Part shown: positions 13,121 through 54,660 of the stretch, piece by piece
Layout: each line of letters begins with the position of its first letter
How positions within the stretch are numbered: the stretch's first letter is position 1
Assembly (NCBI RefSeq): GCF_006345805.1
Contig: NC_043016.1
Location: 2,976,001-3,040,000, forward strand
DNA length: 64,000 nucleotides
Direction: 5' to 3'
DNA from: Octopus sinensis
Lineage: Eukaryota
Position numbers and translations under genes: made by a program
The notes under the pieces: generated by a model
Told to the model about the DNA's origin: nothing
What the model saw: the letters and a program-made list of their open reading frames with translations, nothing else
The model's database searches: none

Positions 13121-13292
13121 GGGGACAAATCGATTACATCGACCCCAGTGCATAACTGGTGCTTATTTTATCAAGTCAGGAAGGATGAAAGGCAAAGTCG
13201 ATCTCAGCGGAATTCGAACTCAGAACGTAAAGACGAACGAATTTCGCGAAGCATTTTGCCCGGAATGCTAACGATTCTGCCAGCTCGCCGCC
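13121..13292 (-). mobile_element. tRNA-derived SINE family 1
   Basis: Head GGCGGCGAGCTGGCAGAATCG, B-box-like GAGTTCGAATTCC, body GCCTTTCATCCTTCC; many copies in window. Confidence 0.85.
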
Positions 13293-16105: not shown

Positions 16106-16285
16106 AAACAAGGACAGACAAAGGGATTAAGTCGTTTACATCGACCCTAGTGCGTAACTGGTACTTGATTTATCGACCCCGAAAGGATGAAAGGCAGAGT
16201 CGACCTTGGTGGAATTTGAACACAGAACGTAACAGCAAACGAAATACGACTACGCATTTCGCCCGGGTTCTGCCAGCTTACCGCC
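16106..16285 (-). mobile_element. SINE family 1
   Basis: Matches 37099-37331. Confidence 0.85.
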
Positions 16286-18501: not shown

Positions 18502-19479
18502 GAGAGAGAAGAAAGATAAATGAATATGCGTTTATGTGCTCTATGTATATGTTTGTGTAAGTGCTTAGAGACTTTTGAGGCATCAGGAAAAAAAAATGAA
18601 AGAATATTTGCAGCTGAGTAAATTCGAAATGCGAAAAAATATTCAGATGTATATATGTATGCGTGGGTGCGTGTGTACATGTACATAAATACACAAACAA
18701 AAATATATATCGACGATAAGATGCAGATATTTTAAGATGCTGAAGTAAACAAAGTAACAACAATAAAAACGGTATAAAAAGGAAATAAAGTTAACTCGAT
18801 CGAAAACTCTAAAGAAATTTACTAGAGTTATTTGTGTGTGGTATGACAAAAATAGCGGCAAATGGTTGGAATAATTGAAGGCAAATGATAATTGAAAAAT
18901 CTGATGTATTCTTGTAACGACTGGCTTTTTATTGCTATTTACATTTTTAATGTGATACTCGAAGACAGATTGTTTGGTTTGTTGTGTAAGAGGTCAACAA
19001 AACATCACCCTGCCAGATTACACTTAATTCACGTATGTTATGAGCAAAAAGGTTCAATTAAATGTCTGATGACTAGAAAACATTCACACATATTCACACA
19101 CGAAAAAGAAGAAAAAAATAACACACAAACAAACAAACAAATACTTGTGTATATGAGTAAGTATTGTGCTATGTGCAAGTATCTATATACGAGCGCGCGC
19201 GTGTGTACACGAGTGTGGAAATTCACCATTGTGCAATAGAAAAGAAATATTTCGATGCTAAATGCATAATGTCGAAATATACACGCGTCAGGAAATGAAA
19301 CTTCACATTAGTTGCTTTGAGTTATTATTCGTAATTCAGTCCGAAAATCAAAAGTGACTATTTCAATTTTCTATCCCAGACTGTATGCCTGTCTGCCTGT
19401 GGGTATGTATGTCTGTATGTGTATATATATATACGTGTGTGTATATAAATGAATGTATGTTTTATACGCGTAATTCTAT

Positions 19480-19532
19480 CTATCTATCTATCTTTCTACC
19501 TACCTATCTATCTGTCTGTCTATCTATCTATC

Positions 19533-19563
<31 letters not shown>

Positions 19564-19569
19564 CTATCA

Positions 19570-19640
<71 letters not shown>

Positions 19641-19641
19641 A

Positions 19642-19703
<62 letters not shown>

Positions 19704-19762
19704 GTATCTATCTATCTATCAATCTATCTATCTATCAATCAATCAATCTATCTATCTATCTA
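19480..19762. repeat. (TATC)n microsatellite
   Basis: Direct reading. Confidence 0.95.
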
Positions 19763-19856
19763 TACACGCAATACAAGACACACAGACATGTATATACAGG
19801 TATATACACATTCTCACACACACCTTTAACACGCCCCCCCCCCCATATATTTATCC

Positions 19857-19913
<57 letters not shown>

Positions 19914-20892
19914 GCACAATCAAACCTTAAGCAAGTATTTTATATTTCTGCATATAATGTATAGAAATACGACAGTTAAGTGTATTTTGCAATTTGGTTA
20001 TGTCCTTGCATCTTCATGATAGCATGTACTGACAAGGTTTGGAAATCTTTCTTGTTTCCATTTTTTCCCTCAACTATTGTGTTGTTTTAGAAAGGCTTTC
20101 CCTATTATATGTTTAGTGCGAGTGTTTATTTTCAAAGTGAATATTAATTTATAAATATATAAATGTATGTTAAAAAATATGAGCTACAATGATGCAAAAG
20201 AAGTCTGAAGAAAATAAATAACAAAAATAATACATTAACAGAAGACTCATAAATGTGAAATAAAGTATATTACATTTAAGCTTCATAATGGAAAAAATAT
20301 TTCTTTCCATCAAGAAAAATAAACAGATCAAAAGTTAAGTTCATTATATCTTCAAAATATTTATTGTTTGATGTCGTTGGCCCTTTTAAGAACAAGTTCT
20401 TGAAAATTTGGGTCGACAGATTTGGTTCATATTTTGAATCGCATAGTTAACGCTAAAAATACTTTCATTGATTTTTGGCTTTAAAGCATTGACCTCACAT
20501 TGTCACCCTATTTCTACGACAGTGATTCTCAGATGATCAATTTACTCCATAAATTCTTGGCCCTTTTCTCCACTCTGTCAGGTTACTGAGGTCAGCTGTC
20601 TTAATACTTCTTCTATCAACTGCCATTAATTTTGGTTTCTGGTCTCAAAAATAATTTAACCCTTTCTCGTCATTCTGTATTTGAATATGTTCAACTAAAG
20701 TAGAAACAATGTAATATAATTGATTGTGACTCGAACATAAACGAGTAACACATTGCTTCAGTGGTATTCAAATTAAATATTTTACTGTTATCTTAACTTA
20801 AGCATAGCGATATTAATATATTTATATTCGTGATATGCATTTTAGTTTTATTTATCAAACCTAGCATTAGTGAGTGTATTATTTTTTCTTAC

Positions 20893-27544: not shown

Positions 27545-27646
27545 CCGGAGTAAACACATAATGTGAAACAAGGTGGAAAAAAGAGTACTCAAAACCAGTG
27601 GTAGAGTAATATGCTTTATTTAAAGCAGCAGAAAATTCAACAAAAC

Positions 27647-27684
27647 CTGTTACTCTGAGTTTCCCGTTGCCGTTCATCGGACAG
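27647..27684 (-). ncRNA. Hammerhead family B (U4C core)
   Basis: CTGT CCGATGA ACG gcaa CGG GAAAC tcaga GTA ACAG. Confidence 0.55.
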
Positions 27685-27700
27685 TTTTTGCTAGAATAAA

Positions 27701-27738
27701 CTGTCCGATGAACGGCAACGTGAAACTCAGAGTAACAG
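27701..27738 (+). ncRNA. Hammerhead family B (U4C core)
   Basis: CTGT CCGATGA ACG gcaa CGT GAAAC tcaga GTA ACAG. Confidence 0.6.
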
Positions 27739-27789
27739 GCTTTGTTGAATTTTCTGCTGCTTTAAAAAGTATATATAGATATATATATA

Positions 27790-29262: not shown

Positions 29263-30360
29263 TTATAGAATGGTACTCCCGGGTGGAATCTGGATGTTAC
29301 CCCATTCGGATTTTCGGTTGAGAGTGGGTTTGTATTCTTGTATACAGACAGCTTCCGTGACCTGTCTCAGCATTGCATCAGTGGGATGTGTGGATAAGAT
29401 GTTTAGCTCAAGTCTCCCTAAGGAGCCCTTGTGGCAGTCTACAGCATGCTGATAGAAGATGGAGTTTGGTTTCTTTTCGATGTAGTTGTCCAGGTGTTCT
29501 TTGACCCTATCATTGATACTCCTAGAAGTCTCACCTATGTATGACTCTGGGTTAGTCGCGCAAGCTCCTTCTTGGCACTTAATTTGGTATACAGTGCTCT
29601 TGGTTTTGCAGTTCACATGTGGCTTTGTAGAACATACTGCACAATTATTTTGACATGTGAATCTATCAAATGGATATGATCTACATAATATAGATTTGAT
29701 AGTCCTACCTGTCTTTTCTACAACCTTGATCTTAAGGCCAGTTGTGTGCAGGATTTTCTTGAATGCCTTACATAATTCGTTCTTAGGTGTGGCGTCAACA
29801 AACATTACACAGTGAATTTTCTTGTTATCATACCAAGTATTGGTTTTATTTCTCTTGTTGGTGTCTCTCTCTAACCTATTCCAGAACTTGTTGCGGTACA
29901 GGGGGGCATATACCGTTTTCGTCATCTCTTAGAATGCGTTCGAATCTTGTTTTCGCTCCTTTGTACACTCTGATTCTGTAATATTGTGTGTATCCGGAGC
30001 GTTGCATTCGGAATATGAACTGGATGTGTTGTTGTCGTTCTTGTGGTTGGCATAGTGGAGATACATTCCTCATTACTCTACTAAGTCTGCCACCATGATT
30101 TGAGCTTGGTGTACTCGACATCGCTGAGTCACTACGGATTACCAGTGGATTAGCCATAGGTTTACAATAGTGTGAATGGAGTATACAGGGTTTAACATTC
30201 CGTTAACCATAGTATTTCCATCCACAGCTCAGTATCTAGGACAGGTAATCTATTACTGGGGTGTTTAGAGGGGTAGTCCACGGTAACTTTTATACTGCTA
30301 TGAATAGAGTCAGCTATGTGTTGTATAGCTGTCATCACCTGTTCTTCATTTAGTAGAGAG
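29263..30360 (-). pseudogene. PLE RT C-terminus plus GIY-YIG endonuclease
   Basis: IHSSIKVTVDYPSKHPSNRLPVLDTELW, KPMANPLVI, VMFVDATPKNEL, VYQIKC...YIGETSRSINDRVKEH, LRQVTEAVCIQEYKPTLNRKSEWG; several 1-nt frameshifts. Confidence 0.9.
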
Positions 30361-31838: not shown

Positions 31839-32379
31839 GAGATAAATAAAATATATGCATAATACACATATATGTACGTACCTACATCTACATGTATATA
31901 AATGCATATATAAATAATTATACCGGAGTACAGGACAACACTAAGACGTAGAAACGAAAAACCAAAACAAGAAACGGAAAACGAAAAAAACAAAACGAAA
32001 AACAAAAAACTGACGAGCTACACAAGGACCAAAACCCCCGTCATCAGCTGTCGCTAGAGGAGTCAGCATGTTTCGAAGGCATAACAGACACTAATCCAAT
32101 AGGCCTTCCTGCGAGAGAATTAAAATAAATTCCAAGCAGCGGGCAAAATGAGTACGAACACAAACAAGACGTAACAATAAGACTGCAAAATTAAATACAT
32201 GTACAAAAACAAACACACAAGAGGACGAACGAAAAAGCCTTTTTTCTGGCATAGACAAACAATAAAACTGCAAAAAATAAAAATACATGTACAAAAAATA
32301 CAATTAGTTACAAAACGAGATACATGTACAAAAACAAACACACAAGAGGACGAACGAATGTATATATATATATATATAA

Positions 32380-34735
32380 AACCTGTTACTCTGAGTTTCA
32401 CGTTCCCGTTCATCGGACAGTTTTGTTAAAATAGAACCGATATGACAATTCGATCAAGACTAGTATAAACGTTACACCTTTAAAAATGGATTTGTTTTAT
32501 TGGTCTTTTCGAATAACGGTCATATGCGAGCGATAAAGAAAAATTAAACAAAACAAATACATGAGTTCAATATAAAATATAAAATTATAAAAATCGAGGA
32601 AAAACCTTAAATCGAAGCTTTGGTTCAAATACATATTGTCATTAATGATACAGAAAATATAATTCGATTAATATAAATAATACATAAAAATTGAAATTAT
32701 AATATATTAAAATATATTAAAATATTTCACAACAGTACATACTCATACTAAACCATTAACATACATGTATAAATCAAAATACACAGATAGATGTGCGCAG
32801 ACCACATACATATACAAACATATAAATGCAAAACGAAAATATACACACAGCTGCATGTATACATATGTATACGCAATCTTGCTCGCATGCAAAAATCACT
32901 TGTTGTATACATATAGACTAGGAGTAAAATTCATTGAGGTGGGGCAGGGGAACGATCTTGTAAGCAACAGAAAGCTAAAGACGTGAGTAAGGGAGGGGGC
33001 GTAAAGTTACAGGACTCTATACAAGTAACGAATAGGAAGAGAAAAAATAATGAAAGAAAGGAAGAAAGAAAAAAAGGAAAAAAGAAAAATAATAAAATTC
33101 TGACTATACGCGTCGAATGTTTGTATACAGATTATGTAAGCAGTAAATACACATATACGAACACATATATAGAGACAAGTACGCAAACACACAAGTCCAA
33201 GTGGATACATGCATACACATACATTCATGTATGTATGTGCATAAGTACAAACATACGCATATACATAGACGCATGCTTACAAATACATATGTATGCCAAT
33301 ACACATATTCACATAAAAATGCCAAGGATCTGACAACATTATTTTTTAAAAATTGCTGACTGCATAATAATAAAACAAATTAAGTACTGGGCTTACAAAG
33401 AATAAGTCCCAGGGTCGAGTTGCTCGACTAAAGGCGGTGCTCCAGCATGGCCGCAGTCAGCTGACTGAAACAAATAAAAGAGTAAAAGAGAAAAGAGAAA
33501 GAGTATAACACCCTATACTGGATTATGAATTAAATTACCAAAGTGAGCCTATACAATATAATAAAATGAAATAAACTAAGTCGAAGGTTTTTCTCAAGGA
33601 ATATGTCGAAATATAAACAAAAATGTACAGTACTTTGCTATGCGGAATGAAACTTGCATAGTGCGAAACAAATCCATCGGTGTGATTAAAAACTAGTCCA
33701 AGAATAAAAAAATCAAAAAGACAAAATATACGCTATCCATATGGGATATTTATGTTCGACATTTTGAATTTGGTTGCGTACCTGCATGAGTTCGAAAGTT
33801 CGCTTCTTTGATTCAAAAATTATTGCCTTTGAATAAAATGAAATATTTCTCTAACAAACAGAGATCGCTTTAAAAATTTTTCCTGTGTGCCCCGTGCCTG
33901 TATGGTGCCGCTCTATCTAGAATGCTCCATGACACGTTGAAAGGTCGGGCTTCTTTTTCTTTTAGTTTCCAGACATATTTCGCCAGGCTGGTCTTCGTCT
34001 TATTTTCTTGGTATCGAAAGGAATTTTTGTGCGAATAAAATCGTGTTTTAAAAGAATTTTCCGAAGCCCCTGTATAAGTCTTATATTCAGATGAGCCTTC
34101 TATTTGTACCTTGGCTCTATAAACGACTCTTTTTACCAAATATTTTCCTTCCAACAAACAGGAGGATTCATCTTTACAATTACATTTTTTAAGAGGATCG
34201 GCACCATGCTTAATATCAATTACATTCTTGTTGTGCTGGCTAACGTAAGAGGCGAAACTCCTGCAACAAGAATAGCTAATCCTAAGGGTTCTTCTATTAA
34301 ATATACCATAACATTTATGATCCTGTTTAAAATGCCTAGAGACTAATTTCAAGAATTCCCTACCTATGTTTGTTTTTACGGCCAAATTGAAAGCTGGGTT
34401 GAACCACAAAACTTTCCTGGTCCTAGTTCTACGCGTAGCATTACTACTAGCATTACGTTGGTTATACTGGATCTTCTCAGAGAATCCACTATTCCTTAAT
34501 GCGCTATCGTAATAAGGTGCAGCATTACGGAATGCTGCCTCATCCGAAGAAATTGACGATATTCGTCTACCTACATTGCTGACTAAGTTCCTAAGAATAA
34601 CTGGCAGAGGATTTGATTCTTTGCTAATATACGATAGCTTGTCATTAGGCTTACGGTAAGGTTTAAATCTATCCGACCGTAACTTCAAATTTACATCTAA
34701 AAAATCCACACTTTTCAGGTTAGCATAAATCGCTA
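32380..34735 (-). mobile_element. 5'-truncated PLE (RT C-terminus plus GIY-YIG at about 33733-34735, tail with hammerhead), same family as 42.5-46.4 kb
   Basis: VDFLDVNL, YRKPND, VLWFNPAF, CNCKDESSC, YTGASENSFKTRFYSH; SINE2 3' fragment inserted at about 33381-33500. Confidence 0.9.
32383..32420 (-). ncRNA. Hammerhead family B
   Basis: CTGT CCGATGA ACG ggaa CGT GAAAC tcaga GTA ACAG. Confidence 0.6.
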
Positions 34736-35504
34736 TTGGCAGAATTGTTGTTTTGTACAGATAAATCTTCAGCTCTATACTCATGTTATTTCTATACCAA
34801 AGTGTTATCAGTCTTCTAAATACTGCTGCTGCCTTGCCAATTCTGCAGCTTACATCTGTCTCTGCATCGCCCTTGCTTGTCACTATGCTTCCCAGATATG
34901 TGAAACTTGTAACTACTTCAACTGGTTCTTGTCCGAATTTCACTGGCTCAGTTTCTAAGACTATTGCCAACGCCAGGAAAAGTGCTGTGCTCAGTGTTGC
35001 TCTTCCGGCTGAAGTTTGCGCCAGATGTAAAGCTGAGAGAACAACAGGCCGGATGTCAAGCCAACAGATGGTGCTACGAGCGAATATTCACACTGCCTAA
35101 CACCGTAGAACAATGCAGGGAACACCTAAGCCCACTGACAATAAACTTCATTGACTTCAAAAAGGTGTTTGACTGTGCATAGAGAAACACTCTGGAAGAT
35201 TGCAAGAGTATATGGAATACCAGACGATTACATCAATTGCTTAAAACAACTCAAGCTATTGCATTTGAACAGAGTATGAATTCACTGGTTTTCTTAAGAT
35301 CATCACTGGGGCCGTTTCTTGCCACCAATGTTATTTCTGATGGCCATCGATTTTGCTATGCAAAGAACAATGGTGGGACCAGCTTTAGGTATACAATGGA
35401 CGGCGAAGGAATGGCTAACAGACTTGGATTTTGCCGATGACATTGACCTATTGGTTGAGAATCAGCCAGCATTACACGAAATGACAACAAAAATGGAAAG
35501 CAGG
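34736..35504. mobile_element. RTE-clade LINE RT fragment with internal inversion
   Basis: Plus strand: PGKVLC...LREQQAG...INFIDFKKVFD...LDFADDIDLL. Minus strand 34736-34970: VEVVTSFTYLGSIV...RIGKAAAVF. Confidence 0.9.
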
Positions 35505-35976
35505 CACATATATATATCCATACATATGTATTTATGTATATATGTATGTGTCTACGTAAGTACGCATGTATGTATGTATATATGCTTGTGTATACATGAA
35601 TGCATATATGTGCGTGGGTGTGCACGCGTATGCATATATGTAAATATAAGTAATACTTTCAAATTTACATTAATACCTTGTAATATACCGCTTAAAGCCT
35701 GCTCACTGTATTTGGTTACCTCATGTCATGAACAGTGTGGGGCTAAATAGCACTGGATTTAATTCAGGAATTACTTCATGTCCGTAGACTTTATAAAACA
35801 GGAATTCACGAGACTGTTTATTATTCGATACGTTCATTTCGACTCCCGTTGCATCGGTGCCTCGTGGATATGATGCTTTACCAAATAGGTGTGGTGCATC
35901 ATTTGGGCAGATATGTCAGGGTCCCTCATTTTATAATCTCTTTTTCGCATATGTGGTCAGAATATGTTTTGGTAGT

Positions 35977-36040
35977 TGCAGTTCGCTACTTGTCTACACG
36001 AGGAACTGTAGCTTCTCGTGTAGTCAAGTAGAGAAGTGTA
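35977..36040 (+). ncRNA. Candidate pre-miRNA hairpin
   Basis: 25 of 28 stem positions paired, only 1x1 mismatches, 8-nt loop ACTGTAGC. Confidence 0.55.
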
Positions 36041-36479
36041 TATTTCTATGCAACCTTGGCAGGCTCGTATCACGTACAAATATGTGAAATGCTATAGACT
36101 AGCGCTCATTGAATGAAGTTGAGGAATAGCACTTATGGAAAAATTCGAATTATATTATATTTGTGTTGAATATCTTATTTAATGAGTAAATACTGACTTG
36201 CGGAAGAACTTATTCTGATTCGAGGCTTCAACACATTGTTTTTATACCTAATAGGCATGAAGGTATTAAAGTTGAAATTTTTCTTATATCTAAGCTGCTT
36301 ACAACATATGTGCCAGACAAACACGCCTAAATTTAATAAATATTCGCCATAATTAATCGTTGAATCATTATGTAATTATTGTTTGAACATTTCAGCCAAT
36401 CATCATCATCGTCGTCCTCTTTGTTTTTGTTGTTTTTATCATTATTATTAATGCATTAATCTAGTGATCTGGTTAAAAC

Positions 36480-36681
36480 CTTAGCATGCCAGACAAAATG
36501 CTTCTGGCTTTACGTTTCGAGTTCAAACTTTACCTAGGTCCACTTTACTCTTTCTGTTTCCGTTGCCGATGAAATAAGTACCAGTCAGAAACTGGGGGAT
36601 TTAATTTATTTAAACACTCCCATTGAAATTGCTGGTCTTGTGCTAAAATTTGAAACATTATTATTATCCCCATCATCATCC

Positions 36682-36745
<64 letters not shown>

Positions 36746-36935
36746 TATCATTCTACTTGTTGTTGCATCATTAATGCAGTGACTTGGCAGAAACGAATAA
36801 GATGCTTAGCGGCATTTCTTCTGGTTTTACGTTTTGAATTCAAATTCCACCGCGCTCGACTTTACTTTTTAACTTTCCGGGGTCGATAAAATAAGTACCA
36901 GTCGAGTAGTATGCTCGATATAGTCGACTATCCTT
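36480..36935 (+). mobile_element. Two degenerate SINE family 1 copies around a (CAT)n microsatellite
   Basis: GAGTTCAAAC and TGAATTCAAATTCC B-box-like motifs; GGTCGATAAAATAAGTACCAG. Confidence 0.7.
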
Positions 36936-36959: not shown

Positions 36960-37800
36960 AGAGTTACACATAACAAAAATGGAAAACACTAGCGAAGCTG
37001 ACTAAATTCCAAGAAAAGGCTGCCAAAAAGAATTGGATAAAAAGAAATACAGAAACTTAAAGTTTTGGAAGACAGCTAACAGTAAATACCTCACCATATA
37101 TTTCTTTACTACCTACAAGGGGCTATACACAGAGGGGACAAACAAGGACAGACAAAGGGATTAAGTCGGTTACATCGACTCCAGTACGTAACTGGTACTT
37201 ATTTAATTGACCCCGAAAGGATGAAAGGCAAAGTCGACCTCGGCGGAATTTGAACTCAGAACATAACGGCAGACGATATACGGCTATGCATTTCGCCCGG
37301 CGTGCTATCGATTCTGCCAGCTCACCGCCTCGTAAAAACCTCACCATAGTCAAGAAACGGAAGTAGACCAATCAAAAACTCCTCAGTGACCCTGGAATTT
37401 AGAATTGAAGGCAGGAACGGAGGAATTCTTTCTTATTGCCCAGGATCAGAGAATATGCGCAAAGACATAAATAAATAACAAGCCAAGTCCCTCAAGAAAG
37501 AGCAGGCTCCAAGTGCAAAGTCTTTGATGCTTATGGCGAAACAACTGACCGTTTGATATGCGGATGCGTCGTTTTGGCTCCAACAAAATGCAACGCTTGG
37601 CACAACAAAGTTGGTCATTTTAATCACTGTAAAGCCTTCTTTAGAACATAACATACTAATAGCATAATTCATGACAACCACCCAGATGATATTGTTAAAG
37701 GCACTAAAAATAAGACTGATTTACTCAGATGTAAATATACTATTGAGCAAAAAAATGTAACTGCCAACTCGCTAATCATAAAAGCATAGAAACTGAAATA
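36960..37800 (+). pseudogene. Degenerate R4/Dong LINE 3' region interrupted by a SINE
   Basis: SKCKVFDAYGETTDRLICGCVVLAPTKCNAWHNKVGHF (decayed RLE zinc finger). Confidence 0.6.
37099..37331 (-). mobile_element. Full-length SINE family 1 with 17-bp TSD
   Basis: GTAAATACCTCACCATA (37082-37098) and GTAAAAACCTCACCATA (37332-37348). Confidence 0.92.
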
Positions 37801-42467: not shown

Positions 42468-42570
42468 CGGAGTAAACACATAAATGTGAAACAAGGTGGA
42501 AAAAAGAGTACTCAAATACCAGTGGTAGAGTAATATGCTTTATTTTAAGCAGCAGAAAATTCAACAAAAT

Positions 42571-42608
42571 CTGTTACTCTGAGTTTCTCGTTGCCGTTCA
42601 TCAGACAG
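42571..42608 (-). ncRNA. Hammerhead family B, canonical core
   Basis: CTGT CTGATGA ACG gcaa CGA GAAAC tcaga GTA ACAG. Confidence 0.7.
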
Positions 42609-45600
42609 TTTTTGCTAGAATGGAACATATATATAAATTCAATCTATACTCTTACAAACGCTACACCTTTAAAAAGAAATGGACTTGTTTGATTGGCCCT
42701 TTAGAAAAAACGGTCAATCTTCGAGCGATAAACAAAAAGGTCAAAAATATATGTATATATATATAAAAAAAACTTATAAAAATTATAAAATCCGAGGAAA
42801 AACCGAGGAAAAAACCTATTGCCGTTAATGAAGACAGTACAAATTAATGCATAGAAATTAAACCTGTTATAAATACTGCAATACATATTTATATTAAAAT
42901 CCACATATATATATCAACATACACAAAAGGATGCGCGTAAACGCCATACATACATATACAGACGTATGAATATGAATCTAAATTATACACATAAAAGCAT
43001 GTGTACATATATCCACGCAAACCGTCTCGCACGCAAGCTAAAATCATCTATGTAGCAATTCTCATATACTGAGCAAGGAGGGGGAACGAAAGAAAGGGAA
43101 AGAGAGAAAAAGGAACGAAGGAGGGGTAGGGAAAAAACTTGTAGCGATATTATTGGCATCTATAGAGGCCAGTATAATACACAAGTTTGAATTGATACAT
43201 ATACATACCGTCGTGTGTATGCGTGCTTAAGCACAAGCATACTTTCACTAACACATACACAGATACGCATGCTTACAAATACATATGCTTTGCTATACAC
43301 AAACTTATATAAACATTCTAAATTTGACAACATTGCTTTTTAAAAAAAAACATTGCTTTAAAAAATGGGTGCATTAATAAAAATATATACGAAAGACATA
43401 TAAAATAAAATATAACATCCTATTTTGGGTCATTATAAATAATCAAGGTAATATAAATAATCAAGGTAATCTTATGCAATACAATAACATGAAAACAAAG
43501 TTTGTAGGTTTTTCCTAATATATATGTAGAAACAATAAGACTTTGCTATAGATCCGTCGTAGCGCTCAAGAGTCAAAATCAAAATCAAAATCAAAATACA
43601 AAATATATACTCTATCCATATGGTATATTTATATTCGACATTTTAAATTTAGCCGCGTGCCTACATAAGTTCATTAACTCACTTCTTTGATTCAAAGAAT
43701 TATTGTCTTTGAATAATATGTGCATTTTCTCTAATAAGCAAAGCTTGCACTTGAAATTATATTTGTAAGCTCCATGCCTGTATGGTGCCGCCCTGTCCAG
43801 AATGATCCATGTCACGTTGAAAGGTGGGGCTTCCTTTTCTTTTAGTTCCCAGACATATTTTGCTAGGCTGGTTTTCTTCCTATTCTCTGGGTATTTAAAA
43901 GAATTCTTATGAGAATAAAATCTTGTTTTAAATGAATTTTCTGAAGCCCCTGTGTATGTCTTGTATTCCGATGAGCCTTCCACTTGCACCTTGGCTCTAT
44001 AAACTACTCCTTTCACTAGACATTTCCCTTCTAACGGACAGGAGCTTTCGTTTTTGAAATTACATTTCTTAATGGGCTCGGCACCATGTCTAATCTCAAT
44101 TAGCTTCCTATTATGTTGGCTAATGTAAGAGGCGAAATTTCTGCAACAAGAATAGCTAACCTTCAGGGTTCTTCTATTAAATATTCTGACCCTGCTTAAA
44201 ATGCTTAGAGACTAATCTCAAAAATTCCTTACCTATATTAGTCTTTACGGCCAAATTGAAAGCCGGGTTGAACCACAAAACTTTCCTGGTCCTAGTTCTT
44301 CGTGCAGCATTATTATTAGCATTAAGCTGGTTGAACTGGATCTTCTCCGAGAATCCACTATTCTTTAATGCGCTATCGTAATAAGGTGCAGCATTATGGA
44401 ATGCTGCCTCGTCCGAAGAAATTGAAGATATTCTCTACCTACATTGCTGACTAAGTTGCTAAGGATAACTGGTGGATGGTTCGAATCTTTGCTAATATAC
44501 GATAGCTTTTCATTGGGCTTACGGAAAGGTTTAAATCTATCCGATCTTACATTAAAATTTACGTCTAAAAAATCTACACTATTCAGGTTAGTATCTATCG
44601 TAATCCGTAAGCCCATCCTTTGAAAGAAAGCTATAAGGTCCTTCCTAAGTCTATCTGATTCATGGCCGTTTAGATTTGCACGAAGAACTAGGACCAGGAA
44701 AGTTTTGTGGTTCAACCCGGCTTTCAATTTGGCCGTAAAGACTAATATAGGTAAGGAATTTTGAGATTAGTCTCTAAGCATTTTAAGCAGGGTCAGAATA
44801 TTTAATAGAAGAACCCTGAAGGTTAGCTATTCTTGTTGCAGAAATTTCGCCTCTTACATTAGCCACATAATAGGAAGCTAATTGAGATTAGACATGGTGC
44901 CGAGCCCATTAAGAAATGTAATTTCAAAAACGAAAGCTCCTGTCCGTTAGAAGGGAAATGTCTAGTGAAAGGAGTAGTTATAGAGCCAAGGTGCAAGTGG
45001 AAGGCTCATCGGAATACAAGACATACACAGGGGCTTCAGAAAATTCATTTAAAACAAGATTTTATTCTCATAAGAATTCTTTTAAATACCCAGAGAATAG
45101 GAAGAAAACCAGCCTAGCAAAATATGTCTGGGAACTAAAAGAAAAGGAAGCCCCACCTTTCAACGTGACATGGATCATTCTGGACAGGGCGGCACCATAC
45201 AGGCATGGAGCTTACAAATATATTTCAAGTGCAAGCTTTGCTTATTAGAGAAAATGCACATATTATTCAAAGACAATAATTCTTTGAATCAAAGAAGTGA
45301 GTTAATGAACTTATGTAGGCACGCGGCTAAATTTAAAATGTCGAATATAAATATACCATATGGATAGAGTATATATTTTGTATTTTGATTTTTGATTTTT
45401 GATTTTGACTCTTGAGCGCTACGACGGATCTATAGCAAAGTCTTATTGTTTCTACATATATATTAGGAAAAACCTACAAACTTTGTTTTCATGTTATTGT
45501 ATTGCATAAGATTACCTTGATTATTTATATTACCTTGATTATTTATAAATGACCCAAAATAGGATGTTATATTTTATTTTATATGTCTTTCGTATATTTT

Positions 45601-46370
45601 TTATTAATGCACCCATTTTTTAAAAAGCAATGTTTTTTTTTAAAAAGCAATGTTGTCAATTTAGAATGTTTATATAAGTTTGTGTATAGCAAAGCATATG
45701 TATTTGTAAGCATGCGTATCTGTGTATGTGTAAGTGAAAGTATGCTTGTGCTTAAGCACGCATACACACGACGGTATGTATATGTATCAATTCAAACTTG
45801 TGTATGTATACTGGCCTCTATAGATGCCAATAATATCGCTACAAGTTTTTTCCCTACCCCTCCTTCGTTCCTTTTTCTCTCTTTCCTTTCTTCGTTCCCC
45901 CTCCTTGCTCAGTATATGAGAATTGCTACATAGATGAATTTTAGCTTGCGTGCGAGACGGTTTGCGTGGATATATGTACACATGCTTTTATGTGTATAAT
46001 TTAGATTCATATTCATACGTCTGTATATATTATGTATGGCGTTACGCGCATCCTTTGTGTATGTTGATATATATATGTGGATTTTAATATAAATATGTAT
46101 TGCAGTATTTATAACAGGTTTAATTCTATGCATTAATTTGTACTGTCTTCATTAACGGCAATAGGTTTTTTCCTCGGTTTTTTCCTCGGATTTTATAATT
46201 TTTATAAGTTTTTTTTATATATATATACATATATTTTTGACCTTTTTGTTTATCGCTCGAAGATTGACCGTTTTTTCTAAAGGCCAATCAAACAAGTCCA
46301 TTTCTTTTAAAGGTGTAGCGTTTGTAAGAGTATAGATTGAATTTATATATATGTTCCATTCTAGCAAAAA

Positions 46371-46408
46371 CTGTCTGATGAACGGCAACGAGAAACTCAG
46401 AGTAACAG
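46371..46408 (+). ncRNA. Hammerhead family B, canonical core
   Basis: Identical to the reverse complement of 42571-42608. Confidence 0.7.
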
Positions 46409-46448
46409 ATTTTGTTGAATTTTCTGCTGCTTAAAAAAATAGTATATA

Positions 46449-46489
<41 letters not shown>

Positions 46490-46496
46490 TATATAC

Positions 46497-46568
<72 letters not shown>

Positions 46569-46620: not shown

Positions 46621-46848
46621 TTCTTTACTACCCACAAGGAGCTAAACACAGAGGGGACAAACAAGGACAGACAAAGGGATTAAGTCGATTATATCGACCC
46701 CAGTGCGTAACTGGTACTTCATTTATCGCCCCCGAAAGGATGAAAGGCAAAGTCGGCCTCGGTGGAATTTGAACTCAGAACGTAACGACAGACAAAATAC
46801 GGCTACGCATTTCGTCCGGCGTGCTAAAGTTTCTGCCAGCTCCCCGCC
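46621..46848 (-). mobile_element. SINE family 1, full length
   Basis: Matches 37099-37331. Confidence 0.9.
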
Positions 46849-46908
<60 letters not shown>

Positions 46909-47027
46909 ATAATATATATATATATATATATTCTTACATCTTTACTTTTTATTATATTTTATAATTATTGGGGAGATGTACTCGCATAGCAAGTGATTTG
47001 ATCTGAGATCATGTGATGGAACGAAAA

Positions 47028-47311
47028 CAATTGCAGCGTGGAAGGTGTTTATAAGCCATTTAAGAAACACACAAAAACCGTTAGATTCATTCAACATTTA
47101 AGTTTAATTTGTCAAAATATTTTCGTCGATAAAATCCGCGACCTGTTCACTGACAAAATTCCGTGATGCATCACGGATTTTTGTCAATGAACAGGTCGCG
47201 GTCTGAAAGCGAGGAAAATATTTTGACAAATCAAATTTAAATGTTGAAGTGAATCTAACGGTTTTTGTGTGTTTCTTAAATGGCTTACAAACACCTTCCA
47301 CGCTGCAATTG
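47028..47311. repeat. Foldback (inverted-repeat) element centred on CCGTGATGCATCACGG
   Basis: CAATTGCAGCGTGGAAGGTG... mirrored by ...CACCTTCCACGCTGCAATTG. Confidence 0.9.
47108..47157 (-). ncRNA. Hammerhead family C, G3:C8 core
   Basis: TTTGTCA GTGAACA G GTCG cggattttat CGAC GAAA ATATTT TGACAAA. Confidence 0.6.
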
Positions 47312-47629
47312 TTTATATTTATTATTATCCTTTATAATTATGTTTACATTTATATATATTTTCTTTTTTGTGATCCCAACTTCATTAAAGTTTCATCCCC
47401 TTCCCCTCCTTTCCTCTTTCTCTCAACATCCAATTCCTTCCCCTAATATGAAGTAACCTACCCAGTATTCATTCTATATCGAGTGTAAAAACGGTATGGA
47501 CGATTTGTTTTGGAGTCTAATAATACCATGTACGCCTATGAAGATTTACAAACGTACTTTCCCAATGAAACTCGGTTTTTTCTCAAACCTTTTATTATGT
47601 GATACAAGTCTTTGGTGTAGCAATTGTAC

Positions 47630-48955: not shown

Positions 48956-49361
48956 ATTTAGATATTTTAATATTTCATTCTGTAAGTTACTGCACATGCG
49001 CAACAATACCAAAACATTGCAACTTCATAAAAGTGTATAGCTTCTAACGAAACACTAACAATCCGCTGAGAAACATTTGAACATTTTGAAACATTTGAAG
49101 GGCAAATGTGTTTTTACTTTAGCGCGAAATGATAAAATGATTCAAAAGAAAATTATTTTTAAAATGCGTTTCTATAATCTCATGAAACAGAAGTAGACCA
49201 ACCTTATGGGGCTTTTACAACAAAGTAATATACCATGGTTTCACTCTCGAACCTCTGAAAAGAACCTCTTCAACTACAAGCGGTCATATACATTGTTATC
49301 ACTGATACTCTCACTTTGTATATGCGTATGTATTAATATATATATCTGTCTGTTTCTCTGC

Positions 49362-49446
<85 letters not shown>

Positions 49447-49600
49447 CATCCATCCATCTATCTGTTTATCTATCTATCTCTTCATATATACATATATATA
49501 TGTATATATATATATACACTTGTATGTATGTGTATATATGTATATATATATGTGTATGTACATATATATATATATATATATATATACATATGTATGTATG

Positions 49601-49632
<32 letters not shown>

Positions 49633-49925
49633 ATTATACTAATATATATATATATATATCTTATATATATATTATATATATATATATAACAATATAGGAT
49701 GAAGTCCCTTTCTCTACAGAAAAGGATTCCATCAAAAAGCGTGGCAGTATATTAAAAGAAACCTTTACAGTTGAAGTATAATCATCTTATAATTAAGGGC
49801 TAAAGAGGGTTATTCTAAAGCCAATACACTGATTTATCCACTTATAATCCACTTGTTACAGGAAAATTGAACTGAAAGCGGGCAACTAACCTTTAGAAAA
49901 TTTAAATTCGTTATCTATATATAAA

Positions 49926-51772
49926 TCGGTACTTGGCGGTCGTCCACAGGGCGGCTGGCTTCGGTCCCGTCTTCCGCGGTTGGATCGCTGCCTTGTATAG
50001 CGGCATCCGATCGATGATTCGAGTGAACGGTCACCTGTCGAAACCGTTTGACATCACGCGTTCGGTCCGTCAGGGGTGTCCCCTGTCGGCGCTTCTGTAT
50101 GTATTGACTCTCGAGCCGCTACTGCGGAAGCTGGCGACACTGAGGGGCATCCCACGGGAACTGGGTTGCGGGACGAGCGTGTCGGCATATGCGGACGATG
50201 TCACCGTCATAGTGTCGAGCGACAAACACATCACGATGATAGTCGATACACTAAAAAAATAGGAAACAGTGACGGGGCGAAGATTAACCCGGAAAAGTCA
50301 GTGGGTTTGCTACTCGGCACCTGGAGAAGCAAGCCCATGCCGTCCGACTGCGGCTCAGTAGTAGGACGCTGGACGGACGGACCGGTTAAATTGCTCGGGT
50401 CTGGTTCAGTCCGGACCTCCAAATGGATAAGAACTGGGACGAGATCACGAGTAGAGTGGTCGCTCTCAGCCAGACATGGGCTGAGAGAAAGCTGTCTCTA
50501 AAAGGTCGGGCGGAGGTGGCGAACGCGTACATCGCATCCGTCATCGATTATCGCCTGACCGTCGTGCCTTGTCCAGACGCTACCATCACCAAACTGGAAC
50601 GCTTTCTGTGGAAGGGTGGCGTTCCGGTGGTGAGGCGATCCATTTTCAGTCAACATCCATTAAATGGAGGACTTGGCATGCCGTGGTTGATGATGCGCAG
50701 GCATGCCCTGAGACTGCGACATCTCTGGAACTTCATCGATGACGGTGAACATGTGTGGAAGCCGTTTGAGAGGCGCGCCTTCCCGCAGCTCGTCTCACTG
50801 ACCGAACTGCAAACGTGGATCAAGAAGAGACCGAAACTGGGCGATTGGCACCGAGTGTCTGCCGTCCGGGGTCAAACTTGTGCAACTTACAAATTACTAA
50901 AGCGTTCTATAGAGGACTAGTGGAGGGGAGGTCCGACGACACTCGGGGCAAACCTGGGCGTCGACGAGAAATTCCTAGCCCGCCTGTTCAGGACGACGTT
51001 CGGGCTGGGGCCTATGGATAACTTCCAGAAATCCCTGGCTTGGCAATGCTATCGAGACGCACTACCTTTTCGAGAGAAGAAGCTACAGGCACGGTTCGAA
51101 AACCATCACCGGACCGACCTGCCCGAGATGCTGTCAGAACGACGAATCCGTTCTGCAGGCACTCGTGCAGTGTCCAGATATTTCAGAGCTGTGGACCGCT
51201 TATCGGCCGAGTTTATCGTGAATATTGTTCCACCACCTTCCTTTAAACGGGAAGGGAAAACGGTTTTCGTTACGCTGATGACTATGGCGAAAGAATGTGT
51301 GTGGTGGACGCGTTTGAAAGGACTGCAAACAAACACCTTCCTCTCTGATCAGTCTCTCGTCAACTTTTTCAAGTACCACTTGAAAAGGAGGATAAGAATA
51401 GAGAGGAAGTCTTTGTCGAACAAATGTTTCGATAAAAAGTGGGTAAAAGTGGCAAAAATGGTCAGTATGAAAGACGACACCATTTTAAGCGTAAATCTGT
51501 AACCAAAAGAGACAACTTACTCAAGTGTACATTTCGAACTGTCTGAGGTGACCTTGGTCTTTTTTTTAGGTTTTTCTTTCCAAGGCTACACCTAAACTGT
51601 GAACTTTATATATATTGCTTTTTTATACACCACATAACCCACAGATCCCTATTGATCGAACGTTTTTTTCTTTGTGTGTCCCACCCATCCCACCCCGAAA
51701 ATAAAAAAACTCTACATTGTATTTCGTCCATTTTTTCTGTGTTTAGCCGCTGTGCGGCCACACAATAAAAAG
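49926..51772 (+). mobile_element. 5'-truncated Tx1/L1-clade LINE (ORF2 RT and C-terminus, 3' UTR)
   Basis: SVRQGCPLSALLYVLTLEPLLRKL, SAYADDVTVIV, INPEKSVG, GGLGMPWL; stop at 51502; AATAAA followed by (TATC)n. Confidence 0.92.
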
Positions 51773-51828
<56 letters not shown>

Positions 51829-52179
51829 TTATCTATCTATCTGTCTGTATGTCTGTCTGTCTGCCTGTCTGTCTTTCGGTTTGTCTGTCTATCTATCTAC
51901 CTATCTAACTATCTATCGATATCTATATCTATATCTATACACACACGCACACACACAGAGTCTGATGCACGCACACATACACGTACTCTAATTGTCTTTC
52001 AGCACAATACTAATATTGCTTTGGATTCTACCCAGCGGGTACAAAACAAAACTATATCATGTTTTACAGCGAGAAGTGTATCACCATCCTCCAATGAAAC
52101 ATAAACCAAACAGCCAATGGATGTCTTCTCCGAATGGAGTCTTAAAGCGTGACTTCATTGTTGTCTTTCTTATATTCTT

Positions 52180-52562: not shown

Positions 52563-53019
52563 AAAGTAGTCTCCTCGAATGGAAATTATAGTATGCTAGA
52601 GAGTGAGGGTTTTGCTTTTTAAGACGACCTCTCTGCTCCCTAACTGCTTAACCCTGACCACGTGAACCATATTTGCCTATATTTCTTTCAAGCCTTTCTA
52701 ACGGCATGTGTATCGCTACTTTTAGGCGACTGCTGTTGGTAATGTTATCTATCGGCCTTCCTAGCAATTACTCGCTGAATTTCATTGGAGGTGTTAATGA
52801 CGTCATAATTCATACAGACAAAATAAAACAAACAAAAGTAGATAAAATATTACATGAATTATTCCCATTAGAGTACAATTCAGTAGTTTCATTCATCTGA
52901 AGATGCAATATTGACACAAATTCACAATAGTAAAGAGATTCCTGTAAACCATAAACTTGATATATTTCGGAAGCTGGCACCACGTTCATACAGTACAAAC
53001 GAAATTAGTGTTGTTTGTT

Positions 53020-53072
53020 TGTTTGTTATTGCTGTTGTTGTTGTTGTTTTTCTTCTATTTCTTCTTCTTCTT

Positions 53073-53103
<31 letters not shown>

Positions 53104-53123
53104 TTATTATTATTATTATTATT

Positions 53124-53162
<39 letters not shown>

Positions 53163-53414
53163 GCTGTTGTTGTTGTTGTTGTTATTGTTGTTGTTATTAT
53201 TATTATTATTATTATTGTCGTTGTTGTTGTTATTATTATTATTATTATTATTATTACATTATTATTATCATTATTATTATTATTATTATTGTTGTTGTTG
53301 TTATTATTATTATTATTGTTATTATTATTGTCATTATTATTATTATTGTTATTATTATTGTTGTTATTGTTATTGTTATTATTATTATATTACATTATTA
53401 TTATTATTATTATC

Positions 53415-53485
<71 letters not shown>

Positions 53486-53501
53486 ATTGATATTATTGTT
53501 A

Positions 53502-53541
<40 letters not shown>

Positions 53542-53873
53542 GATATTATTGTTATTGTTATTATTATTATTATTATTTTTTTTTTATTATTATTATTATT
53601 GATATTATTTATTATTATTATTGTTATTATTATTATTGTTATTATTATTATTATTATTATTATCATCATTATTATTATTATATTATTATTTTTATTATTA
53701 TTATTATTATTGATATTATTATTATTATTATTGTTATTATTATTATTGTTATTATTATTATTATTATTATTATCATAAGTATTATTATATTATTTTTATT
53801 ATTATTATCATTATTATTATTATTATTGTTATATTATTATTATTATTATTATCATCATTATTATTATATTATA

Positions 53874-53943
<70 letters not shown>

Positions 53944-53975
53944 CATCATTATTATTATTATATTATTTATTATAT
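53020..53975. repeat. Compound (TTG)/(TTC)/(ATT) microsatellite
   Basis: Direct reading. Confidence 0.95.
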
Positions 53976-53976
53976 T

Positions 53977-54490
53977 GAGTGAGAGAGCAGTTCATGCCAT
54001 CAAAGTGACACTGGGTAAAATATACGAAGCCCAATAACCCATCATGACTACCCGTCTGATAAAGGTACACCAGGCACATGCATCACAACCATATGTGCGC
54101 GACATGGTAATCTCATATCAAAATAAACAGCACATGACCTTGCAGGTGGGGCCCAGTTAGAATTTTCTTCAGGTTGAGTAGCCCATCCTGCTCAAAAGGT
54201 CCCTGAATAAGGGTTGCTTTAGGATGTTGAACGAAACACCTATGTTTCCAGAGGTGAATTATTCAAACTCCAAAGAATCCCTCTCAACCATGGCCATGAT
54301 GCTCCCCCACTACTTCTGCTCGTGATCAGAGATGCACGTATTGTCAGCCACTAAGGGACATGCTCAACTGGTTAAGGTCAAACAACTGACAAGCAAATTT
54401 GTGGTATTGAGCAGAATATTTGCTGTAGCCCATCTTTTATACCAAGACAAAACAATGTACATGATAACACTTCCAATCAGTTAAGATCAG
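53977..54490 (-). mobile_element. About 500-bp AAT-embedded element, copy 3
   Basis: Reverse complement of 14220-14734; (ATT)n on both sides. Confidence 0.85.
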
Positions 54491-54503
54491 ATTATTATTA
54501 TTA

Positions 54504-54534
<31 letters not shown>

Positions 54535-54560
54535 CATCATTATTATTATTATTATTATTA

Positions 54561-54594
<34 letters not shown>

Positions 54595-54599
54595 CATCA

Positions 54600-54660
<61 letters not shown>

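What the first reader, a model, noticed from the sequence alone, without database searches (positions are those of the whole stretch)
35977..36054. Pre-miRNA-like hairpin with Microprocessor motifs
Arms CTACTTGTCTACACGAGGA and TTCTCGTGTAGTCAAGTAG pair at 18 of 19 positions (one G-U), and the basal extension gives 25 of 28, all with symmetric mismatches. Apical UGU at 36007-36009; CAAC (CNNC) at 36051, about 17 nt past the predicted 3' cut. It lies in unique sequence and folds better on the plus strand. I do not recognise the mature sequence. Established: coleoids have a large lineage-specific miRNA expansion.
Basis: partly seen in the sequence, partly recalled or inferred. Interest (0 to 1): 0.75.

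Follow-up and report, generated by a model that had tools for sequence, protein, structure and literature searches.

The report
MicroRNA-like hairpin, function unproven
A short RNA hairpin in repeat-rich octopus-like DNA has the shape and sequence marks of a microRNA precursor, but it is more likely an accidental hairpin than a working gene, and if it is a gene it is probably one already catalogued.

Summary
Bases 35977-36040 (+) fold into a stem with 25 of 28 positions paired and an 8-nt loop (-35.7 kcal/mol, z -6.2). The minus strand folds less well (-28.6). With flanks, the stem reaches about 35 positions (35970-36004), with UG at the base, UGU in the loop and CNNC downstream. It is single-copy in the window and matches no Rfam family.

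Function could not be tested: no small-RNA reads and no second octopod genome were reachable.

One outside link turned up. A 5p arm starting at 35985 has seed CUACUUG. That is the seed of Ovu-Novel-64-v1 in Zolotarov et al. 2022 (8-mer target CAAGTAGA). A chance seed match is about 1% in that one register and about 8% over the 12 registers I tested.

Against a microRNA: chance alone should yield thousands of such hairpins per genome, against 164 curated octopus microRNA genes. The implied precursor is only 50-56 nt, at the extreme short end of curated microRNAs. The matching register starts with G.

My rough estimates are about 0.6 incidental hairpin, about 0.3 the known Novel-64 gene, and about 0.1 something else. 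Either way it is not new. One comparison with MirGeneDB would settle it.

The parts
35965..36052 (+). Whole pri-miRNA-like stem-loop. It consists of weak basal helices (35965-67/36050-52, 35970-72/36046-48, 35974-76/36042-44, with a bulged U at 36041) plus the core hairpin.
   Evidence: MFE of 35960-36060 is -38.5 kcal/mol. Pair probabilities are 0.3-0.7 for the basal helices and >0.9 for the core. The 141-nt fold gives -50.6, z -4.9.
35977..36040 (+). Core hairpin: 25 of 28 positions paired, three symmetric 1x1 mismatches, two G-U pairs.
   Evidence: inverted repeat I2.
35985..36006 (+). Its seed, nt 2-8, is CUACUUG. Structure-based alternatives start at 35982-35984; a start at 35983 gives UCGCUACUUGUCUACACGAGGA.
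   Evidence: Seed table. The 8-mer CAAGTAGA is listed for Ovu-Novel-64-v1. None of the other 11 registers tested as 8-mers matched, and six of them also failed as 7-mers.
36005..36012 (+). Apical loop ACUGUAGC (8 nt unpaired).
36013..36034 (+). Candidate 3p arm paired to the 35985 register with 2-nt overhangs (UUCUCGUGUAGUCAAGUAGAGA). For a 5p start at 35983 it would be 36015-36036.
   Evidence: Geometry derived from the pairs. No seed match was found for any 3p register.
35970..35971 (+). Basal UG at the single- to double-strand junction (-15/-14 from 35985; -13/-12 from 35983).
   Evidence: The chance rate of UG within +/-1 is 0.18-0.20.
36007..36009 (+). Apical UGU (UGUA, not the full UGUG).
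   Evidence: The chance rate is 0.09-0.11.
36051..36054 (+). CNNC (CAAC), 17 nt past a 3' cut at 36034 and 15 nt past a cut at 36036. Its first C is weakly paired in the basal helix.
   Evidence: The chance rate within +/-1 is 0.09.

Best explanation
This is an incidental short inverted repeat: 28 positions with an 8-nt spacer, arisen by chance or by a small palindromic duplication. It sits in a roughly 770-bp non-repeat island (35650-36420) inside DNA dense with transposon fragments and microsatellites. In a plus-strand transcript it would fold into a stable stem of about 35 positions that resembles a Microprocessor substrate. Under this reading it is not a selected gene. The UG, UGU and CNNC motifs and the 7-nt seed identity with Ovu-Novel-64-v1 are coincidences. 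Any small RNAs it yields would be rare by-products. It is the kind of raw hairpin from which new microRNAs occasionally arise. Shown here: the structure, the strand bias, single copy within the window and the motif positions. Inferred: the lack of function, which rests on base rates and on the short length.
For: Base rate:
- Shuffles of this window give about 0.1 such hairpin per strand per 64 kb.
- For a genome of about 2.7 Gb (my own knowledge of octopus genome size) that is several thousand chance hairpins.
- Only 164 curated microRNA genes are reported for O. vulgaris (PMC9699675).
- A random 64-kb window holds a curated microRNA about 0.4% of the time.

Length:
- Drosha registers 35982-35985 give precursors of 56-50 nt and inter-arm loops of 12-6 nt.
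- Across 21,176 curated microRNAs the mean precursor is 60 nt, the median loop 15-16 nt, the minimum loop 5-7 nt and the shortest precursor 49 nt, in cnidarians.

The seed-matching register:
- It starts with G, whereas curated mature microRNAs are strongly enriched for U at position 1.
- It would put the Dicer cut inside the loop.

Other points:
- The CmR and bulged-GWG motifs described are absent in every plausible register (read directly from the sequence).
- No Rfam family reaches its gathering score. The best hits are generic (mir-881 scores 20.5 bits against a cut-off of 70).
- The neighbourhood is transposon debris and microsatellites, and no host exon was recognised.
- A seed hit somewhere among the 12 registers tested has roughly an 8% chance, taking about 110 listed seeds.
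Against: - The hairpin is rarer than chance within this window (about 0.1 expected per strand), and it is the only one of its class here.
- Three Microprocessor motifs fall in mutually consistent places, at a chance rate of about 0.2% per register.
- All five wobble pairs are G-U on the plus strand, and none of the mismatches is A-C. That fits a plus-strand RNA better than a decaying DNA palindrome.
- The 13 + 22 position geometry is the textbook pri-miRNA layout.
There the chance is about 1-2%, not 8%.
Confidence: 0.58

Rival explanations
1. It is a real canonical microRNA gene, most likely the locus of the octopus family provisionally called Novel-64 (Ovu-/Obi-Novel-64, in MirGeneDB). Under this reading, a plus-strand transcript folds. 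Microprocessor, guided by the basal UG, the apical UGU and the CNNC, cuts near 35984/35985 and 36034/36035. Dicer removes the loop. The 5p arm, with seed CUACUUG, is loaded into Argonaute and represses mRNAs that carry CAAGUAG(A) sites.
For: - I checked my decoding of the table on Mir-31, Bantam, Mir-137 and Mir-1992.
- 18 of 22 arm positions are paired, against a required minimum of 16 and a curated mean of 19 +/- 1.6.
- UG, UGU and CNNC sit at about -15/-14, +23 and +17.
- Position 1 of the 5p arm is mismatched and position 9 is U, as in curated 5p-mature microRNAs.
- The plus strand is favoured.
- It is single-copy in the window.
- Octopod context.
Against: - Only 7 nt link it to Novel-64. 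The full sequence, the arm of origin and the genome position of that gene could not be retrieved.
- A 50-nt precursor with a 6-nt inter-arm loop would be almost the shortest bilaterian microRNA on record.
- It starts with 5' G.
- No v2 seed or 3p seed from this hairpin appears in the table, although the table lists only v1 forms and is truncated.
- The base rate is low.
Confidence: 0.3
2. It is a real but uncatalogued small-RNA or dsRNA element. It could be a young, species-specific microRNA processed in the structure-favoured register (5p start 35982-35984, for example UCGCUACUUGUCUACACGAGGA). It could also simply be a double-stranded segment of an intron or UTR that ADAR edits.
For: - A 5p start at 35983 gives U at positions 1 and 9, a mismatch at position 11 (the mid bulge/wobble/mismatch zone), a 3p arm starting with C, a 13-nt lower stem and a 22-nt upper stem. 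All match the curated tendencies.
- Zolotarov et al. state that their 164 genes are an underestimate, because species-specific genes were excluded.
- They also note abundant hairpin ADAR substrates in octopus introns and 3'UTRs.
Against: - No evidence of expression.
- I chose the register after seeing the sequence.
- A stem of 28-35 bp with mismatches is short for an efficient ADAR substrate (my own knowledge).
- The same base-rate problem applies.
Confidence: 0.08
3. It is part of a multi-copy mobile element (a MITE, a fold-back element or a SINE/LINE tail), so any reads from it would be repeat-derived.
For: - The window is packed with transposon fragments, and it holds two long fold-back palindromes.
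- A truncated LINE RT fragment ends about 330 bp upstream, after allowing for a microsatellite.
Against: - No second copy of either arm or of the 35650-36420 island exists in 64 kb.
- The spacer is 8 nt, so this is not a TIR pair around an element body.
- The complementarity does not extend as it does in the fold-back palindromes.
- There is no coding signal in any frame.
Confidence: 0.04

Closest known systems
Ovu-/Obi-Novel-64 (MirGeneDB provisional name; Zolotarov et al. 2022, PMC9699675)
   Same: The seed, nt 2-8, is CUACUUG if the 5p arm starts at 35985. The host lineage is probably octopod. It stands alone rather than in a cluster, as reported for all novel octopus families.
   Different: Nothing beyond the 7 nt could be compared. 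The arm that carries the seed in the real gene is unknown. The implied 50-nt precursor and 5' G would be atypical.
Canonical bilaterian pri-miRNA (35-bp stem with basal UG, apical UGU(G) and 3' CNNC; MirGeneDB 3.0, PMC11701709)
   Same: About 35 positions from the basal to the apical junction. UG, UGU and CNNC are present. There are 18 paired positions in the 22-nt duplex, and only symmetric mismatches.
   Different: The lower 8-9 positions are weak (three G-U pairs, one bulge, pair probabilities 0.3-0.5). The loop is only 8 nt. The CmR (mGHG) and bulged-GWG motifs are absent. Processing was not shown.
Long fold-back palindromes in the same window (27619-27766; 47025-47314)
   Same: They are inverted repeats that form very stable hairpins.
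   Different: Those have 74- to 145-nt arms at 92-98% complementarity, and one is built from an interspersed repeat. This hairpin is 28 positions, imperfect, and made of unique sequence.
Generic Rfam microRNA families (mir-881, mir-578, mir-4536)
   Same: Hairpin shape only.
   Different: The scores are 17-21 bits against gathering cut-offs of 70-98, so it is not a member.

Membership tests
Canonical animal microRNA (MirGeneDB criteria, PMC12539619 / PMC11701709) | Imperfect hairpin precursor with at least 16 paired nucleotides between the arms | tested here: met
   18 of 22 positions are paired for arms 35985-36006 / 36013-36034. The criterion is quoted.
Canonical animal microRNA (MirGeneDB criteria, PMC12539619 / PMC11701709) | Reads of 20-26 nt from both arms | not testable with these tools
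   No small-RNA data were reachable.
Canonical animal microRNA (MirGeneDB criteria, PMC12539619 / PMC11701709) | 5' homogeneity of the reads | not testable with these tools
   No small-RNA data were reachable.
Canonical animal microRNA (MirGeneDB criteria, PMC12539619 / PMC11701709) | 2-nt 3' offsets left by Drosha and Dicer | not testable with these tools
   The stem geometry permits such offsets in any register, but only reads can show them.
Canonical animal microRNA (MirGeneDB criteria, PMC12539619 / PMC11701709) | Arm, loop and precursor lengths within the curated range (arms 20-27 nt, loop >=5-8 nt, precursor >=49 nt, mean 60) | tested here: inconclusive
   It is inside the range but at the extreme short end: 50-56 nt precursor and 6-12 nt loop, depending on register.
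Canonical animal microRNA (MirGeneDB criteria, PMC12539619 / PMC11701709) | Conservation in a second species (required for a family name) | not testable with these tools
   No octopod genome was reachable. Exact ORF look-ups, two protein searches probing the hairpin region, and DNA pattern scans found no orthologue.
Canonical animal microRNA (MirGeneDB criteria, PMC12539619 / PMC11701709) | Unique locus, not overlapping a repeat and not high-copy | tested here: inconclusive
   It is single-copy within 64 kb. The genome-wide count is unknown.
MIR-Novel-64 of Octopus | Same seed on the mature arm | tested here: met
   CUACUUG at 35986-35992 corresponds to the listed 8-mer target CAAGTAGA. This holds only for a 5p start at 35985.
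MIR-Novel-64 of Octopus | Precursor sequence identity and orthologous genome position | not testable with these tools
   The sequence is absent from the held papers and supplements.
Any Rfam RNA family | Score at or above the family's gathering threshold | tested here: not met
   There were no matches in the whole window. The best sub-threshold hit scored 20.5 bits against a cut-off of 70.
MITE / fold-back transposon | Multiple dispersed copies, with terminal inverted repeats around an element body | tested here: not met
   There are no other copies in the window and the spacer is 8 nt. Genome-wide copy number was not tested.

The most novel reading that the evidence does not exclude
The hairpin is a genuine microRNA gene that is not in MirGeneDB. 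It would be either a young species-specific gene processed from 35982-35984, or a second paralogue that shares the Novel-64 seed.
Probability: 0.06. Interest if true: 0.3.

Novelty: already known. Interest (0 to 1): 0.2.

Why it matters
Not much, on any reading. If it is the Novel-64 locus, the scan has rediscovered one of the 90 cephalopod-lineage microRNA families from raw sequence alone. That is a useful sanity check on the first-stage reader but not a discovery. If it is incidental, it shows how closely chance hairpins can mimic the full set of Microprocessor cues, and why structure and motifs alone cannot name a microRNA. Only an uncatalogued, expressed and conserved microRNA would add anything, and even that would be one more member of a well-known kind.

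Tried and rejected
- Rfam: nothing at gathering thresholds over the whole window, and only generic sub-threshold mir hits locally.
- Literature search for the arm sequences as 12- to 18-mers in U and T forms: only unrelated primer matches.
- Search for the names 'Novel-64' and 'Ovu-Novel': no other paper.
- Supplements: those of the Science Advances paper and its preprint hold seeds only, and no precursor sequences. No MirGeneDB 3.0 supplements are held.
- Attempt to reach orthologous DNA by using spurious ORFs that span the hairpin as probes. The exact look-up found none. The word-indexed search had no candidates. The full HMMER search gave two hits, both artefacts on tandem-repeat proteins.
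- Transposon ORFs as handles: the best relatives are 43% identical. One O. bimaculoides UniRef entry is 77% identical over 78 aa but has no contig. One 722-bp contig of GCA_024449705.1 is 71% identical. None gave usable flanks.
- DNA pattern scans: the metagenome hit L001 shares only the 18-mer and is a chance match. Genome and viral collections gave nothing.
- Rejected readings:
  - Coding sequence: stop codons in all frames.
  - tRNA or tRNA-derived SINE: none found.
  - Tandem repeat: none over the hairpin.
  - Mirtron: no GU...AG at the hairpin ends (read from the sequence).
  - Part of the upstream LINE: no RT-like translation after the microsatellite.

Full report
**1. The observation**

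- RNAfold on the plus strand gives a single hairpin spanning 35977-36040. It has helices of 4, 3, 7 and 11 bp separated by three symmetric 1x1 mismatches, and an 8-nt loop (ACUGUAGC).
- Its energy is -35.7 kcal/mol, with z -6.2 against 200 dinucleotide shuffles, none of which folds as well.
- The reverse complement folds the same way but less well (-28.6, z -5.2), because the G-U pairs become C-A mismatches.

**2. The wider structure**

In 101-nt context (35960-36060) the minimum-energy structure extends the stem downward.
- The added helices are 35974-76/36042-44 (with U36041 bulged), 35970-72/36046-48 and 35965-67/36050-52. The total is -38.5 kcal/mol.
- These basal pairs are weak, with pair probabilities of 0.3-0.7.
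- From the first of them (35970) to the last pair before the loop (36004) there are 35 positions. That is 13 + 22 if the 5' cut falls before 35983.
- A UG sits exactly at that basal junction (35970-71).
- All five wobble pairs are G-U on the plus strand, and none of the mismatches is A-C. The 141-nt folds also favour the plus strand, -50.6 against -37.3.

**3. How unusual it is**

- Sliding 70-nt folds over both strands rank the locus about sixth.
- An explicit scan for ungapped stems with >=25 of 28 pairs found 29 loci on the plus strand and 37 on the minus strand. Almost all are TA, CA or TG microsatellites.
- The only complex-sequence loci are this one and two others, 27655 and 47136. Those two are the centres of long fold-back palindromes, with 74-nt arms in one and about 145-nt arms in the other.
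- Block shuffles of the window give 14.7, 2.67, 0.53 and 0.0 loci per strand at >=22, 23, 24 and 25 pairs. I extrapolate about 0.1 per strand at the level of this hairpin.
- The hairpin is therefore uncommon but not extraordinary. Over a genome of about 2.7 Gb (my own knowledge of octopus genome size), chance alone would supply several thousand.
- UG, UGU and CNNC all present in one fixed register (each +/-1) occur at 0.16-0.21% of positions in this window. The individual rates are 0.18-0.20, 0.09-0.11 and 0.09.

**4. Surroundings**

The window is AT-rich (GC 0.27-0.41) and packed with repeats.
- Upstream lie a GIY-YIG-type element ORF (33873-34700, minus strand) fused to a LINE RT tail. That tail is 77% identical over 78 aa to Octopus bimaculoides A0A0L8GF25.
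- Next come a plus-strand LINE RT fragment (about 35100-35500) and a (TATG)n-type microsatellite (35505-35650).
- Downstream lie (CAT)n arrays and SINE-like repeats (36480-36610, 36790-36930, 37164-37291), with further copies elsewhere in the window.
- The hairpin sits in a roughly 770-bp island (35650-36420). Apart from a few very weak short alignments, this island matches nothing else in the window, and it has stop codons in every frame.
- I found no tRNA, no Rfam family and no recognisable host exon.
- An octopod origin is plausible but not proven.

**5. Outside evidence**

No tool here reaches small-RNA reads or an octopod genome.
- I tried ORF probes across the hairpin, transposon ORFs as handles and DNA pattern scans. 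None produced an orthologue.
- The single metagenome hit shares only the 18-mer.
- The literature search found no paper containing the arm sequences.

One link did turn up, in Data S3 of Zolotarov et al. 2022 (PMC9699675). That table lists conserved 8-mer and 7-mer target sites for each O. vulgaris microRNA.
- I computed the 8-mer target for 5p starts at 35982-35987 and for 3p starts at 36012-36017, then searched for all 12.
- One is present: CAAGTAGA, listed 14 times for Ovu-Novel-64-v1. The 7-mer CAAGTAG is listed a further 9 times for the same microRNA.
- This corresponds to seed CUACUUG, that is, a 5p arm starting at 35985.
- My decoding of the table is right for Mir-31, Bantam, Mir-137 and Mir-1992, whose sequences I know.
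A 3' cut 17 nt before the CNNC gives 36034, and the 2-nt offset then gives 35985.
- The table lists only v1 forms and omits some families (Novel-63 and Novel-65 are absent). A sample of 74 rows held about 45 names, so I take about 110 seeds.
- A chance match is then about 0.7% per arm and register.

**6. Weighing the evidence**

For a microRNA:
- The hairpin is rare.
- Three motifs sit in consistent places.
- The plus strand is favoured.
- The geometry is 13 + 22.
- Position 1 is mismatched and position 9 is U, as in curated 5p-mature microRNAs.
- The seed matches.

Against a microRNA:
- Zolotarov et al. report 164 genes in O. vulgaris. A random 64-kb window therefore holds one about 0.4% of the time. 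Chance hairpins of this quality are expected at about 0.2 per window.
- The hairpin is short. Precursors would be 50 nt (start 35985) to 56 nt (start 35982), with inter-arm loops of 6-12 nt.
- MirGeneDB 3.0 gives a 60-nt mean precursor, a median loop of 15-16 nt and minimum loops of 5-7 nt. Its shortest precursor is 49 nt, and that is in cnidarians.
- The seed-matching register is the worst in this respect. It also starts with G and puts the Dicer cut inside the loop.
- The structure-favoured register (start 35983: U at positions 1 and 9, a mismatch at position 11, a 3p arm starting with C) has no seed in the table.
- The CmR and bulged-GWG motifs are absent.

Combining a window-level prior of about 1% with the motif, strand and seed evidence gives anywhere from about 10% to about 50% for a real microRNA. 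The answer depends mainly on whether the seed test counts as pre-specified, and on the true background rate. I settle on these estimates:
- about 0.3 that this is the Novel-64 locus;
- about 0.08 for another real small-RNA or dsRNA role;
- about 0.04 for a repeat-derived hairpin;
- about 0.58 for an incidental hairpin.

These are estimates built on stated assumptions, not measurements.

**7. Comparison with known families, and novelty**

- In shape and motifs it behaves like a canonical bilaterian pri-miRNA at the short extreme.
- Membership of the microRNA class rests on four criteria: hairpin, reads from both arms, 5' homogeneity and 2-nt offsets. Only the first could be tested, and it is met.
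- Membership of MIR-Novel-64 rests here on 7 nt.
- Nothing about the locus is new in kind. If real, it is most likely already in MirGeneDB. Supplementary text assigns Novel-58 and Novel-70 to the Octopus lineage, so Novel-64 is probably Octopus-restricted too, but that is my inference.

**8. Verdict**

Interest is low. One alignment against MirGeneDB, or one look at the published small-RNA data, would decide it.

Noticed in passing
27619-27766: A near-perfect 148-bp palindrome: 74-nt arms, 95% complementary, no spacer. Its arms are copies of an interspersed repeat that is also seen at about 32123-32425, 42476-42763 and 46291-46563. It is a far stronger dsRNA former than the hairpin under study (about -55 kcal/mol for the central 76 nt).
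   Followed up: partly
47025-47314: A fold-back palindrome of about 290 bp, made of three collinear arm blocks (65, 39 and 33 nt) at 92-98% complementarity. It resembles a fold-back element or a hairpin-RNA locus.
   Followed up: partly
8930-9640 (-), 29266-29928 (-), 33873-34700 (-), 43615-44766 (-), 44922-45245 (+): At least five copies or fragments of one element whose ORF looks by eye like a zinc-finger plus GIY-YIG nuclease domain. The closest database relatives are only 35-43% identical, and many of them carry PF26215. Pfam scans of two of the window copies gave no hit at E <= 0.01.
   Followed up: partly
49906-51499 (+): A LINE reverse-transcriptase region split over several frames. One piece is 71% identical to an ORF on a 722-bp contig of assembly GCA_024449705.1, whose organism I could not identify.
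   Followed up: partly
36480-36610, 36790-36930, 37164-37291 (-), 46683-46810, 16130-16257, 13155-13257: A SINE-like repeat family (copies 74-79% alike). The copies at 36790-36930 and 13155-13257 abut trinucleotide (CAT/ATC)n arrays, which suggests that the arrays grow from the element's tail.
   Followed up: no
19385-19930, 49206-49697, 51650-52000, 53000-54650, and many TA / CA-TG tracts: A very heavy load of microsatellites and short tandem arrays. These produce most of the 'hairpins' found by any structure scan of this window.
   Followed up: no
L001 1082-1105 (metagenome contig Ga0056114_1152245): The only external exact match to the 18-mer CTACTTGTCTACACGAGG lies in an unrelated contig, where it is part of a small local palindrome (GTGTAGCTACTTGTCTACAC). 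I judge it a chance match.
   Followed up: yes
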